A stretch of DNA of 63,366 nt, counting the filler, from Octopus bimaculoides (Eukaryota): the NCBI RefSeq assembly GCF_001194135.2. It is 5 parts of 4 records of this genome, joined end to end, with 100 filler letters (N's around TTAATTAATTAA, not from the genome) between each part and the next. Parts side by side here need not be neighbours in the genome. Positions count along the whole stretch, not along the records: positions 24,090 to 29,499 come from NC_068985.1; 4 more parts are not named here. The stretch is one strand, 5' to 3'. The position numbers and the translations under genes were made by a program. The notes below the pieces were generated by a model. That model had not been told where the DNA came from and searched no databases. It saw nothing but the letters and a program-made list of their open reading frames with translations. Below, piece by piece: positions 24,090-29,599 of this stretch (positions are counted from its first letter, which is position 1; every line of letters starts with the position of its first letter).

Positions 24090-24400
24090 AGCTGATGAAG
24101 GACGTGTTCTCTATGTGGCCTGTGTGTTTTCTGTGCTCTATTTATGTTCTGTTTCTCATTTTGGCCACTTTTTTTTTTTTTGCAACGTCCTGTACCCAGA
24201 TATGCATCTATATATACATGTTACCCTCCGAGACACAAGTCCGGTCAAGATTGGTTATGGAAGATCAGCAGGTGACCATGCATACCAGTCTCTCCTCTCC
24301 ACGCCACCGATGTTATCCAAGAGAAAGGCAAAGACCGATACAGCTTGGCACCAGTGACGTCGCAACTCATTTCTACAAATGAGTGAATCCCAACGCTCTA
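24090..24400. repeat. Interspersed repeat, SINE-like, unclassified
   Basis: A discrete unit ending ctcatttctacaaatgagtgaa, similar to the tail of the 2150-2440 SINE. Confidence 0.4.
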
Positions 24401-24500
24401 ACAACTAAATTATGCAACTAGATCTAGTTATAATCATATAATTAAGAATTATATTGCCAGTATCAATGTAATTATATTTATCATACTAATACTATGATAG

Positions 24501-25106
24501 TTCTTTCTAATTTTGGCATAATTTCGAGGGGAGGGGAAGACAATTACATCGACCTCAGTGCTCCTCTAGTACTTTATTTTATCGCCCCGTCAAAGGATGG
24601 AAAGCAAAGTCGACCTCGCCGGAATTTGAACGCAGAGCGTAAAGACGGACGAAATACCGCTAAGCATTTTGTCCGGCTGCCAACCATTCTGTCAACACGC
24701 TTCCTTTCTACTATAGGCACAAGGCCTGAAATTTCGATTCCAGTGTTATACTGATACTTAATTTATCGACCCCGAAAGGATAAAAGGCGAAGTCGACCCC
24801 GACCGGCATTCGAACTCAGAACGTAACGTCGGAAGAAATGCCGCTAAGCATTTTGCCCAGCGCAATAACGATTCTTATTTCTTTATTGCCCGCCAGGGGT
24901 TAAACATAGAGGGAACAAACAAGGATAGACAAAGGGATTAAGTCGATTACATCGATCCCAGTGCGTAACTGGTACTTAATTTATCGACTCCGAAAGGATG
25001 AAAGGCAAAGTCGACCTCGGCGGAATTTGAACTCAGAACGTAACGGCAGACGAAATACCACTAAGCATTACACCCGGCGTGCTAACGATTCCGCCAGCTC
25101 ACCACC
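24501..25106 (-). mobile_element. SINE cluster: monomer (24501-24700) plus dimer (24701-25106)
   Basis: Three copies of the main-family core. Dimer junction at 24874/24875. Head ggtggtgagctggcggaatcgttagcac. Confidence 0.85.
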
Positions 25107-25176
25107 TTTATAAATTAATACGTAATGCTATACTTTAATACTAGAATAATAATTATTATCGTTATTATATACTTCG

Positions 25177-25360
25177 TCATGGCAGAATCGTTAGAACCCC
25201 TGGCGAAATGCTCAGCGATGTTTCGCACGTCGTTCTGAGTTCAAATTCCACCTTTCTTCCTTTTTCGGGTTGGTAGATTAAGTGAAACACTAGGGTCGAT
25301 GTAATCGACCAGTCCCCTCTCCCCAAATTTCAGTCCTTGTTCATTTAGTAGAAAGGATTA
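25177..25360 (+). mobile_element. SINE monomer, main family, internally deleted
   Basis: tggcagaatcgttag (A box), gagttcaaattcc (B box), tail gtagaaaggatt. Confidence 0.8.
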
Positions 25361-25905
25361 TGTTCTTCGTCATGGAGAAGTTGCGATAAAATATAATACT
25401 AGTCCAGTACAGGGGCCACCAGTATCGGCTGCACTTCTCCCACCTCTCATAATTGCTAGTCTTATACTTAAATCATAAACTATAATATCTTTTGGCAATA
25501 AGATACGTACATAGGTCACTAAGAATTTTAACGAGATATTTCACTGAAAAGAAAGTATGCATGATTTTTTACCTAAATAATTTATTCTTTTATTTTTATT
25601 AACATTACCTTAAAAATTATCATTTCTTTTAGAATCATTAAATATATTTCATATTCTTTTTTATTTATACAACTTATTTAGTTATTCATTTCGTTTTCGT
25701 CATTTAATGTGAAAATTAACTGTGCAATAAATAGGATTGGAGCTAAAGTCTTCGTGAGGTGGTAGGTGTAAGGGAAATAACTCTATCAGTTTATTGCGTA
25801 GTTGTTTCCTCTTGATAGATTGACGTTATTTCCGTCAAGATTAGCAGCGACGGCTGTCTATCGACTCGCCCGCGTACAAACACACACACACACACACGCA
25901 CGAAT

Positions 25906-25941
<36 letters not shown>

Positions 25942-26629
25942 NNNNNNNNNNNNNNNNNNNNNNNNNNNNNNNNNNNNNNNNNNNNNNNNNNNNNNNNNNN
26001 NNNNNNNNNNNNNNNNNNNNNNNNNNNNNNNNNNNNNNNNNNNNNNNNNNNNNNNNNNNNNNNNNNNNNNNNNNNNNNNNNNNNNNNNNNNNNNNNNNNN
26101 NNNNNNNNNNNNNNNNNNNNNNNNNNNNNNNNNNNNNNNNNNNNNNNNNNNNNNNNNNNNNNNNNNNNNNNNNNNNNNNNNNNNNNNNNNNNNNNNNNNN
26201 NNNNNNNNNNNNNNNNNNNNNNNNNNNNNNNNNNNNNNNNNNNNNNNNNNNNNNNNNNNNNNNNNNNNNNNNNNNNNNNNNNNNNNNNNNNNNNNNNNNN
26301 NNNNNNNNNNNNNNNNNNNNNNNNNNNNNNNNNNNNNNNNNNNNNNNNNNNNNNNNNNNNNNNNNNNNNNNNNNNNNNNNNNNNNNNNNNNNNNNNNNNN
26401 NNNNNNNNNNNNNNNNTTTTTTTTTTTTTTTTTTTTTTTTGCCGAGGGCTAGTTTCCGAAGATGTCAACAAACCAACACCGGTTGTCACGCGGTGGTAGG
26501 AGGGACAAATATAACGCAAACACACATAGATATATATACATACGCACACAAGCACACATATATAAGAAGCCCGTCGTGTATGTCTTTAAGAAATAAGTTT
26601 TAAATAATGGATAAAATGCTTTGTGGTAT

Positions 26630-26746
26630 TTAGCGAGGCGGATAAAATGCTTTGTGGTATTTCGTCCGTCTTTACGTTCTGAGTTCAAATCACGCCGAGG
26701 TTGACTTTGCCTTTCATTCTTTCGGGGTTGATAAAATAAGTACCAT
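26630..26746 (+). mobile_element. SINE, main family, partial
   Basis: ctgagttcaaatcacgccgaggttgactttgcctttcattctttcggggttgataaaataagtacca. Preceded by a 23-bp local duplication (26609-26631, 26640-26662). Confidence 0.8.
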
Positions 26747-26784
26747 TCTGATATCAATATTGATAACGCTCTTATAGTAACATG

Positions 26785-26842
26785 TTTTTTTTTAATTCAC
26801 TTTTTAATTTATTTTTTTTCTTGTATCTTTTTGCAGGTAAGT
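26785..26842 (+). promoter_or_regulatory. Candidate recursive splice site (ratchet point): 3' splice site fused to a 5' splice site
   Basis: About 50 nt of T-rich tract (ttttttttt-aattcac-ttttt-aatttattttttttcttgtatctttttg) then CAG (26834-26836) directly followed by GTAAGT (26837-26842). Same strand as the GPCR exon. Confidence 0.6.
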
Positions 26843-27559
26843 GTTTCACCTGTATAACTGTTGATGTGTTCGGTAATGTAAAGTTTTGAGATGCTTGGAA
26901 TAGATGCAACGGGATACCTCCAGGTGTTCATTCAGGTAAACACAAATTTTATACTTAGAGTTTCTGCTGGAAAAATATTTCTTGCTTTGAACGAATTTCT
27001 TATTTATTCTCAGTTGATGGCTAAAAAAAATATTTGTTTTCTTTTTTACTTAAGCCTTTTTTTTATTATATATGTACATACATATATNNNNNNNNNNNNN
27101 NNNNNNNNNNNNNNNNNNNNNNNNNNNNNNNNNNNNNNNNNNNNNNNNNNNNNNNNNNNNNNNNNNNNNNNNNNNNNNNNNNNNNNNNNNNNNNNNNNNN
27201 NNNNNNNNNNNNNNNNNNNNNNNNNNNNNNNNNNNNNNNNNNNNNNNNNNNNNNNNNNNNNNNNNNNNNNNNNNNNNNNNNNNNNNNNNNNNNNNNNNNN
27301 NNNNNNNNNNNNNNNNNNNNNNNNNNNNNNNNNNNNNNNNNNNNNNNNNNNNNNNNNNAGAGAGAGAGAGAGATAGAGTGTGTGTGTGTGTGTGTGTTAA
27401 CAGATGAGATCGAGAGAATCTCAATATAGAAAACACTTTGTAGCGCCCAAATGATTTGAACTTACACTCCGATTTCTTTATCGAGGACAAAGTCAGCACT
27501 TGTTGGTTTGTTGCTGTTTTTCAGACCAGGTTCTCTTTCATCAAACAGATCTATCTTTG

Positions 27560-28145
27560 TCTTTTACCTGATCCAGTTATTAGACTGCGGCCATGCTGGA
27601 GCACCGCTTTGAAGGAATTTAGTCGAACGAGTCCACCCCCAGTATTGATTTTTTAATTTTTTAAGACTACTATTTATTCTATCAATCTCTTTTGGCACCA
27701 TGTGGTTGCAAAGCAAATGTCTTACTACACAGCCACGCCTGCATCTGAGACCATTACGCCTCGTCTGCTATATATTGTGATGTTGGAACGGGGAGGAGGG
27801 ATCTCCATCATTCGACGACGAGGATTCAGATATTCGAACAACTAAATAACCTGCTCTTGCATAAACCTACAAAGTGGCTGAGTATTCCTCAGACACGTGC
27901 AACCTTAGAGTAATACTCAGGGAAGAATGTGGATGACACTGTGTGTGTGATGAAGTTGTACCTTTTGATTTGCGGGCAAAATCCACCCTATGGGCTTCTA
28001 TGCAATTTCCGCCTCCTCAATTTCGTTCAGAAGGTATAGGCTGACCTGAGACTAAAGAAAATTGCATTTACCCAAGATGCCAAACAGTAGGATCGAACCC
28101 GGCAACTTGTGGTTTTGAAGTAAACTTCTTAACCATTCGGTCATA
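27560..28145 (-). mobile_element. Degenerate CORE-type and other SINE fragments
   Basis: Tail gactgcggccatgctggagcaccgc and head-like ggatcgaacccg..cttaaccattcggtcat. Confidence 0.55.
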
Positions 28146-28165
28146 CAGCTTCTACTCATACATAA

Positions 28166-28786
28166 TTTTATCTACCATAAGCACAAAGACTGAAGTTTTT
28201 AGGGAGAAGGTTAGCCACATCGACCCCAGTACTTAACTGGTATTTATTTAATCGACCCCGAAAGGATAAAAGGTGAAGACGACCGCAGTCAAATTTAAAC
28301 TCAGAACTTAATGACTAACGAAATGCTTAGCAACATTTCGTACGGCTTACTAACAATCTTCTCATACACAATAGACTTTGCTACTCTAAGCACAAGGCCC
28401 GAAATTTTGAGGAACGGGGCCAGTCGATTAGATCGACCCTAGTATGCAAAGGGTATTTAATTAATCGACCCCGAAAGGATGAAAGGCAAAATCGAGCTCG
28501 GTGGAATTTGAACTCAGAACGTAAAGGCAAACGAAATACCGCCCGGCGTGCTAACGTTTCTTTATTACTTACAAGGGGGCTAAACATAGAAGAGACAAAC
28601 AAGGACAGACAAAGGGATTGAGTCGATTACATCTACCTCAGTGCATAACTGGTATTTATTTAATCGACACCGAAAGGATGAAAGACAAAGTCGACCTCGG
28701 CTGAATTTGAACTCAGAACGTAACGGCAGACGAAATACCGCTAAGCACTTCGCCCGGCGTGCTAACGTTTCTGCCAGCTCGCCGCC
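28166..28786 (-). mobile_element. SINE cluster: monomer (28166-28361) plus dimer (28376-28786)
   Basis: Three main-family cores. Dimer junction at 28560/28561. Intact head ggcggcgagctggcagaaacgttagcacgccggg. Confidence 0.85.
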
Positions 28787-29249
28787 TTTTCACATCCACA
28801 ATAGATAGCGACCAAAGTGGTCTTCGCTTCTGAGTATGATGTAATTTGAAGGAAATTTAGGTGTTATTTCTAACAGGTTGGTCGACTAATATAAAGCAGG
28901 ATGTTTATTTTTGTATATTAGAAGGCTGCATTGAATTAGATATAATTAAATAAAGCTACATTAAAGACAATATTATTAAATATACAGTAAATGATAATTA
29001 CATTTATTGGGAGAAGGTAATTATGAATATTAATGTAAGAAATAATATGTTAACTGACTTTTTAATGGCTTTGGTATATGTATGTATGCATATGTGTGTG
29101 TGTGTGGGGGGGTCTGTATAATGTTTTATATAAATGTGTGTGTATGCATAGATATATATGTATGTGTGTGTATACACACACAGACACCGCGTCTGTGTGT
29201 ATGAATAGTTAGTGACATCTACATATATATATATATATATATACACACA

Positions 29250-29303
<54 letters not shown>

Positions 29304-29400
29304 TATACATACATGCACACATACGTATGTATATTTACATACATACACGTATATATGTATACATACATATATATATACACATATATATATGTATGCATAC

Positions 29401-29431
<31 letters not shown>

Positions 29432-29599
29432 CATACATATATATACACATACACATTTATATATATGTATGTATGTGTCTTTATATATATATATATATAN
29501 NNNNNNNNNNNNNNNNNNNNNNNNNNNNNNNNNNNNNNNNNNNTTAATTAATTAANNNNNNNNNNNNNNNNNNNNNNNNNNNNNNNNNNNNNNNNNNNN

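What the first reader, a model, noticed from the sequence alone, without database searches (positions are those of the whole stretch)
26785..26842. Candidate recursive-splicing ratchet point in a giant intron of a dopamine-receptor-like gene
Seen: a ~50-nt pyrimidine tract ends in CAG and is followed immediately by the consensus donor GTAAGT. It is on the same strand as the GPCR exon and 34 kb upstream of it. In my manual scan of the + strand, AG|GTAAG occurs only here and at the exon's true donor (61063/61064). Established: zero-length AG|GT ratchet points subdivide long introns in Drosophila (e.g. Ubx) and in long vertebrate neuronal genes. Inference: this intron is removed stepwise. I know of no description in molluscs, but cannot search for one.
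Basis: partly seen in the sequence, partly recalled or inferred. Interest (0 to 1): 0.85.

Follow-up and report, generated by a model that had tools for sequence, protein, structure and literature searches.

The report
Unverified splice-site look-alike beside a SINE
The sequence really does contain a textbook "acceptor joined to donor" splice motif. Nothing available here shows that it lies in an intron, is conserved or is ever spliced, so it stays an untested look-alike in repeat-rich non-coding DNA.

Summary
The motif is real. A T-rich tract (26785-26833; 80% pyrimidine) ends in CAG (26834-26836) and is followed directly by GTAAGT (26837-42). It is unique on both strands of the piece. On a rough scoring matrix it is both the best acceptor and the best donor there. 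That donor would bound a stop-filled cryptic "recursive exon".

The rest of the claim is not supported. "Giant intron of a dopamine-receptor gene, 34 kb upstream" comes from joining unrelated pieces. The site sits on a 671-bp contig between two N gaps, next to a tRNA-derived SINE. No exon, ORF or RNA family is present in the piece. No cephalopod DNA or ORF from this locus could be retrieved, so conservation and usage are untestable here.

By my estimate, chance gives roughly 0.05-0.25 such motifs per Mb per strand, or hundreds per large genome. Most likely this is a fortuitous, unselected composite motif (about 0.6). A genuine recursive site remains possible (about 0.2). Interest is low until RNA or comparative data exist.

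The parts
26785..26833 (+). T-rich polypyrimidine tract (80% Y, 72% T over 50 nt; 85% Y over the last 20 nt). TT at -5/-6 relative to the AG.
26804..26808 (+). TTAAT branch-point-like sequence with A at -31/-30 from the AG. A second TTAAT lies at 26792-26796. This is a sequence match only.
   Evidence: sequence. Compared with the Drosophila branch-point range of -36 to -21, peak -30.
26834..26842 (+). CAG|GTAAGT: an acceptor joined to a donor with 9/9 match to the U1-complementary consensus. Junction at 26836/26837.
26837..26935 (+). Candidate 99-nt cryptic RS-exon. It has stop codons in all three frames.
26936..26941 (+). Downstream donor-like CAG|GTAAAC. It is weaker than the reconstituted donor: 7/9 consensus matches and 7.8 vs 12.8 bits on a rough scoring matrix.
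26600..26785 (+). Copy of a tRNA-derived SINE-like repeat, with the T-rich tract starting at its right-hand end. Its body aligns to the seven other copies in the piece up to about 26770.
25942..26416 (.). Assembly gap (N run) to the left of the 671-bp contig that carries the site.
27088..27358 (.). Assembly gap (N run) to the right of the 671-bp contig that carries the site.

Best explanation
This is a fortuitous, unselected composite splice-site motif in repeat-rich, AT-rich non-coding DNA. A T-rich low-complexity tract lies next to a SINE copy. Read on the other strand, that tract looks like an A-rich polyadenylated tail (AATAAA, 14 nt, A9). The tract happens to be followed by CAGGTAAGT. Nothing shows that it lies in an intron or that selection maintains it. 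If the + strand is transcribed as part of an intron, the spliceosome would probably recognise it and then remove it again. That would be neutral recursive splicing through the 99-nt cryptic exon. Such use would follow from the sequence itself, not from an evolved ratchet point.
For: (1) Chance expectation. In Markov simulations trained on the piece, CAGGTAAGT occurs 2-9 times per Mb per strand. In the piece, 3% of 20-mers have at least 16 pyrimidines. Together these give roughly 0.05-0.25 full motifs per Mb per strand. For a genome of a few Gb that means hundreds of sites (inference). With a looser 80% score, Shepard 2009 found a background of 0.07-0.12 RP-sites per 100 kb on antisense strands of all animals studied. 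(2) There is no gene context. No credible ORF, tRNA or Rfam family was found in the piece. The candidate exon is closed in all three frames. (3) The site lies on a 671-bp contig between N gaps, next to a SINE. (4) On the minus strand the tract reads AATAAA-N14-A9. This is an ordinary origin for antisense pyrimidine tracts.
Against: The site is simultaneously the best of 470 AG acceptors and the best of 547 GT donors on both strands of the piece. It meets every motif-level feature of Drosophila ratchet points: TT at -5/-6, a branch-point candidate at -30, and a weaker donor within 100 nt. From, a donor scoring at least as well within 100 nt has only about a 5% chance expectation. The + strand shows T>A skew, 10 T-runs against 1 A-run, and AATAAA 2 against 16. 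This is weakly consistent with + being the sense strand of a transcription unit. In all five invertebrates tested, such motifs are 4- to >20-fold enriched on the sense strand of long introns.
Confidence: 0.6

Rival explanations
1. It is a genuine recursive splice site (ratchet point). The upstream exon of a long-intron gene is first spliced to 26837 after exon definition of the 99-nt cryptic RS-exon (26837-26935). The regenerated perfect donor GTAAGT then out-competes the weaker GTAAAC donor. The RS-exon and the rest of the intron are removed, leaving no trace in the mRNA.
For: The full consensus (Y)nNCAG|GTAAGT is present. TT at -5/-6 matches 99.5% of fly ratchet points, and the branch-point candidate at -30 matches their peak. 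A weaker downstream donor and an out-of-frame, stop-filled cryptic exon fit the RS-exon model. The site holds the top acceptor and top donor scores in the piece. Strand asymmetry hints at sense transcription. RP-site enrichment is reported in sea urchin and four insects.
Against: There is no evidence that the site is in an intron, no RNA data and no orthologous sequence. A comparable number of chance motifs is expected genome-wide. Large repeat-rich vertebrate genomes show little RP-site enrichment, with ratios of 0.9-1.5. Only nine fully suppressed intronic sites were definitively noted in mammals. The orientation of the 671-bp contig between gaps is uncertain. No paper in the library links recursive splicing with octopus.
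Confidence: 0.2
2. It is the boundary of an ordinary, unannotated exon. It could be the acceptor of a non-coding, UTR or poison cassette exon at 26837-26935. Alternatively it could be the donor of an exon ending at 26836, possibly an exonised repeat.
For: A strong acceptor and a usable donor lie 99 nt apart. The exon length is a multiple of three, with stops in all frames, as in poison exons. The SINE and A-rich-tail neighbourhood resembles known routes of repeat exonisation (general knowledge of Alu exonisation).
Against: There is no coding potential. The ORFs over the site have no relatives among 1.84 billion representative proteins. A perfect donor at the first base of an exon would normally cause that exon to be skipped. 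No transcript data are available.
Confidence: 0.12
3. It is an assembly or placement artefact. The short contig may be misplaced, inverted or chimeric, so any inferred relation to neighbouring sequence is meaningless.
For: The contig is 671 bp long. It is bounded by 475-N and 271-N gaps whose edges are microsatellites and a T24 run.
Against: The motif lies well inside the contig, 420 bp from the left edge and 245 bp from the right. It is not at a junction with low-complexity sequence. An artefact of placement would not create the motif itself.
Confidence: 0.08

Closest known systems
Drosophila intronic ratchet points (zero-nucleotide recursive splice sites; Hatton 1998, Burnette 2005, Duff 2015, Joseph 2018)
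   Same: Juxtaposed strong acceptor and consensus donor, (Y)nNCAG|GTAAGT. TT at -5/-6. Branch-point candidate near -30. Short cryptic RS-exon with a weaker downstream donor and no open frame.
   Different: Fly sites are defined by their position in sense introns of 11-133 kb, by junction, lariat and saw-tooth evidence, and by strong conservation. None of these is available here. The candidate RS-exon is 99 nt, against about 50 nt typical in flies.
Vertebrate recursive splicing with RS-exons in long neuronal genes (Sibley 2015; Blazquez 2018)
   Same: The RS-exon definition model, with donor competition between the reconstituted donor and the RS-exon donor. A stop-containing RS-exon would trigger decay if included.
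   Different: Vertebrate sites were found from RNA data in introns mostly longer than 50-100 kb. Here the host gene and intron are unknown.
Non-functional intronic or intergenic AG|GT motifs (background 'RP-sites')
   Same: They occur at 0.07-0.12 per 100 kb on control strands in every animal examined. They are expected at hundreds per large genome even under a strict definition. Such sites have no supporting context, as here.
   Different: This example is at the extreme high end of motif quality. It also has an RS-exon-like downstream donor.
Repeat-derived cryptic splice sites (antisense A-rich tails giving pyrimidine tracts, as in Alu exonisation)
   Same: The T-rich tract reads as AATAAA-N14-A9 on the opposite strand and abuts a SINE copy.
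   Different: No homology of the tract or motif to the SINE tail could be shown (shuffle p about 0.3-0.4). No second copy of 26771-27087 exists in the piece.

Membership tests
Recursive splice site / ratchet point | [quoted passage not shown] | tested here: met
   perfect CAG|GTAAGT, 85% pyrimidine in the preceding 20 nt, top acceptor and top donor score in the piece.
Recursive splice site / ratchet point | TT at positions -5/-6 (99.5% of fly ratchet points) | tested here: met
   The sequence is ...CTTTTTGCAG|GT, with T at -5 and -6.
Recursive splice site / ratchet point | Usable branch point 21-36 nt upstream | tested here: inconclusive
   TTAAT at 26804-26808 puts an A at -31/-30. This is only a sequence match in AT-rich DNA, and there are no lariat data.
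Recursive splice site / ratchet point | Cryptic RS-exon bounded by a downstream donor weaker than the regenerated donor | tested here: met
   CAG|GTAAAC at 26936, 99 nt downstream, scores 7.8 vs 12.8 bits. Stops occur in all frames. This is motif level only.
Recursive splice site / ratchet point | Located on the sense strand inside a long intron (>10 kb in flies, >50 kb in mammals) | not testable with these tools
The piece is 5.4 kb with no exon. There is only a weak strand-asymmetry hint.
Recursive splice site / ratchet point | Evolutionary conservation of the motif above flanking intron | not testable with these tools
   No cephalopod DNA was found in the metagenome or genome collections. 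There is no ORF relative. Exact ORF look-ups were empty. The search for homologous proteins timed out three times.
Recursive splice site / ratchet point | RNA evidence: exon-to-site junction reads, saw-tooth coverage, recursive lariats | not testable with these tools
Protein-coding cassette exon | Open reading frame through the exon | tested here: not met
   26837-26935 has stop codons in all three frames.
SINE-derived sequence (tail of the adjacent repeat) | Significant alignment of 26746-26870 to tails of other copies | tested here: not met
   Local alignment scores of 27-29 were reached by 31-42% of shuffles. The SINE body ends at about 26770-26785.

The most novel reading that the evidence does not exclude
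The site is a working recursive splice site with a 99-nt cryptic RS-exon in a long intron of a cephalopod gene. That would be the first described example in a mollusc or lophotrochozoan. It would imply that Drosophila-type ratchet points (TT at -5/-6, branch point at -30, perfect GTAAGT) go back at least to the protostome ancestor.
Probability: 0.2. Interest if true: 0.45.

Novelty: not a real feature. Interest (0 to 1): 0.2.

Why it matters
If it were shown to be used and conserved, it would extend recursive splicing to a third major animal lineage. Cephalopods have large, repeat-rich, long-intron neural genes, so it would also give a concrete locus for testing how they handle long introns. 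As it stands it is a single motif match without context. One site cannot establish the mechanism in a new phylum. A genome-wide count of such motifs on sense versus antisense strands would be far more informative than this locus.

Tried and rejected
(1) SINE-tail origin of the tract and motif. The alignment to the tails of two full-length copies was no better than shuffles, so this was not shown.

(2) The site lying inside a larger repeat or an element with terminal inverted repeats. The unique part, 26771-27087, has no other copy in the piece. The flanking contigs share only a 13-nt match.

(3) A coding exon or protein gene. There are only short ORFs derived from low-complexity sequence or the SINE, and stops in all frames of the candidate exon.

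(4) Known RNA families or tRNA. Only sub-threshold microsatellite 'miRNA' hits at 29074-29499 were found, and no tRNA.

(5) Special RNA structure at the site. The fold z-score is -0.92.

(6) Retrieving orthologous or same-species DNA. Exact look-ups of five ORFs found nothing. Exact-pattern scans for the site and for the SINE core in metagenome contigs and genome contigs gave 0 hits. The search for homologous proteins failed three times with time-outs. An exhaustive HMMER search with the ORFs over the site gave two weak hits; the one I inspected, P0002, is an unrelated repetitive protein.

(7) Literature. No paper holds both 'recursive splicing' and 'octopus'.

(8) Bacterial-type promoter and terminator scan. 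It is irrelevant to this eukaryotic sequence and uninformative.

Full report
**What is in the sequence**

The piece 24090-29499 consists of three real contigs: 24090-25941, 26417-27087 and 27359-29499. They total 4,664 bases and are separated by N gaps of 475 and 271 bases. The finding lies in the middle contig, which is 671 bp long.

At 26785-26842 the + strand reads TTTTTTTTTAATTCACTTTTTAATTTATTTTTTTTCTTGTATCTTTTTGCAG|GTAAGT. The tract is T-rich rather than purely pyrimidine. It is 85% pyrimidine over the 20 nt before CAG, and 80% pyrimidine (72% T) over 50 nt.

AGGTAAG(T) is unique on both strands of the piece. YYYYYYNCAGGTAAGT with up to one mismatch matches only here, and none of 100 shuffles gave any match.

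**How good a splice-site motif is it?**

I scored every GT and every AG on both strands with a rough position-weight scoring. The frequencies were recalled from the general metazoan consensus, so I use the scores only for ranking. The site is the best of 547 GT donors: CAG|GTAAGT has 9/9 consensus matches and scores 12.8 bits. It is also the best of 470 AG acceptors, at 13.5 bits.

- There is a T at both -5 and -6, as in 196 of 197 Drosophila ratchet points.
- TTAAT at 26804-26808 places an A at -31/-30. This falls within the -36 to -21 range, at the -30 peak, of mapped recursive branch points in flies.
- A second, weaker donor, CAG|GTAAAC, lies at 26935/26936. It has 7/9 matches and scores 7.8 bits. 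It would bound a 99-nt cryptic exon, 26837-26935, that has stop codons in all three frames.

This last feature matches the 'RS-exon' architecture now held to underlie recursive splicing. In that model a short, unconserved, out-of-frame cryptic exon carries a donor weaker than the regenerated ratchet-point donor. From, a donor scoring at least as well within 100 nt is expected by chance only about 5% of the time. That threshold was chosen after seeing the data.

**What surrounds it**

The T-rich tract starts at the right-hand end of a copy of a tRNA-derived SINE-like repeat (about 26600-26785). That repeat has seven further copies in the piece, six of them arranged as two head-to-tail triplets on the other strand.

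I tested whether the tract and motif are simply the decayed tail of this SINE. The alignment to the tails of two full-length copies is no better than shuffles (31-42% of shuffles score as well). The idea is therefore not supported.

The unique segment 26771-27087 has no other copy in the piece.

Read on the minus strand, the tract is AATAAA (26813 to 26808), then 14 nt, then A9 (26793 to 26785). It abuts the SINE. This looks like a polyadenylated retroposon-type 3' end. It is an ordinary way for an antisense pyrimidine tract to arise, but I could not test it.

The piece contains no credible ORF, no tRNA and no Rfam family. The 'miRNA' hits at 29074-29499 are microsatellite artefacts below threshold. 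RNA folding around the site is unremarkable, with z = -0.92.

The statement that the site lies 34 kb upstream of a GPCR exon, in a giant intron, depends on coordinates outside this piece. The program's note says the window was joined from unrelated pieces, so that context is void. The piece itself does not show that the site is in an intron at all.

The only internal hint is strand asymmetry:
- The non-repeat sequence has T>A (AT skew about -0.08).
- There are ten T-runs of at least 6 against one A-run.
- AATAAA occurs twice on + against 16 times on -.

This is the direction expected for the sense strand of a transcription unit. But the sample is small, it is partly explained by base composition and SINE copies, and T-richness itself makes chance pyrimidine tracts more likely on this strand.

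**Chance**

Markov simulations trained on the piece give AGGTAAGT at 11-29 per Mb per strand and CAGGTAAGT at 2-9 per Mb per strand. In the piece, 3% of 20-mers reach at least 16 pyrimidines. Together these give about 0.05-0.25 full motifs per Mb per strand. For a genome of a few Gb that is hundreds of chance sites (inference).

Shepard et al. found a background of 0.07-0.12 sites per 100 kb on antisense strands in all animals studied, using a looser 80% score. On the sense strands of long introns they found 4- to >20-fold enrichment in four insects and a sea urchin. Vertebrates showed only 0.9-1.5-fold. No mollusc was examined.

Across animal genomes, introns and intergenic DNA are of similar total size (title of the paper read). 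From this I take roughly 10-15% of strand-specific genome positions to be 'sense, long intron'. That fraction is my assumption, not a measured value. With it, the probability that a motif at an unknown location is a selected ratchet point is about 0.4 if cephalopods resemble other invertebrates. It is about 0.05 if they resemble vertebrates. Allowing for the RS-exon-like donor and the strand hint, I put it at about 0.2.

**Attempts to get decisive evidence**

Conservation and usage are the defining tests. All of the following attempts to reach relevant data failed:
- Exact look-ups of five window ORFs found nothing.
- Exact-pattern scans for the site and for the SINE core in the metagenome and prokaryote-genome collections gave no hits.
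- The search for homologous proteins timed out three times.
- An exhaustive HMMER search with the reading frames over the site returned two weak hits; the one I inspected, P0002, is an unrelated repetitive protein.

No paper in the library mentions recursive splicing together with octopus. A recent preprint lists flies, mice and humans as the species where recursive splicing has been identified. A predicted site has also been used in locust work.

**Verdict**

The motif is real and of the highest quality. Its interpretation rests on the motif alone, and the stated gene context is an artefact.

- Best explanation (0.6): a fortuitous, unselected acceptor-donor juxtaposition in repeat-rich non-coding DNA. 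It would behave as a neutral recursive site only if it happens to lie in a sense intron.
- Genuine ratchet point with a 99-nt cryptic RS-exon: 0.2.
- Boundary of an unannotated non-coding or poison exon: 0.12.
- Placement artefact of the short contig: 0.08.

If the recursive reading were proven, it would be a new member of a known kind, in a new phylum. That would be of moderate interest. As it stands, interest is low.

Noticed in passing
24537-25109, 28164-28789 (minus orientation); 25170-25345, 26600-26785 (plus orientation): A tRNA-derived SINE-like repeat of about 200-215 bp occurs eight times. Six copies form two head-to-tail triplets with spacing of 184-217 bp. This is more like a short tandem array than independent insertions. 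Two tail subtypes are visible.
   Followed up: partly
24970-25085 vs 26630-26745; 26630-26745 vs 28650-28765: The SINE copy next to the site is inverted relative to copies 1.5 kb upstream (85% complementary over 116 nt) and 1.9 kb downstream (81%). If transcribed, these could form long double-stranded RNA stems around the site. Such stems could be RNA-editing substrates or intron-folding stems of the kind Shepard 2009 proposed.
   Followed up: no
whole piece, + strand: There is a strand asymmetry: ten T-runs of at least 6 against one A-run, AATAAA 2 on + against 16 on -, and AT skew of -0.08 in non-repeat sequence. This weakly suggests that + is the sense strand of a transcription unit.
   Followed up: partly
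26785-26813, minus strand: Read on the minus strand, the 'pyrimidine tract' is AATAAA, then 14 nt, then A9. This looks like a polyadenylated 3' end or retroposon tail abutting the SINE.
   Followed up: no
26842-26853 and 26933-26943: GTGTTTCACCTG, just after the first donor, is an almost perfect reverse complement of CAGGTAAACAC at the second donor. The resulting stem would pair the two ends of the candidate 99-nt exon. The overall fold is not significant (z = -0.92).
   Followed up: partly
25942-26416 and 27088-27358: Both assembly gaps are bordered by simple repeats: (CA)n and a T24 run on one gap, (TA/CA)n and (GA)n(GT)n on the other. The 671-bp contig's order and orientation therefore rest on scaffolding only.
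   Followed up: no
29074-29499: A TA/TG/CA microsatellite block gives many sub-threshold Rfam 'miRNA' matches (mir-297, mir-3149, mir-466 and others). These are low-complexity artefacts.
   Followed up: yes
26609-26631 and 26640-26662: There is a local direct duplication of GGATAAAATGCTTTGTGGTATTT at the 5' end of the SINE copy.
   Followed up: no
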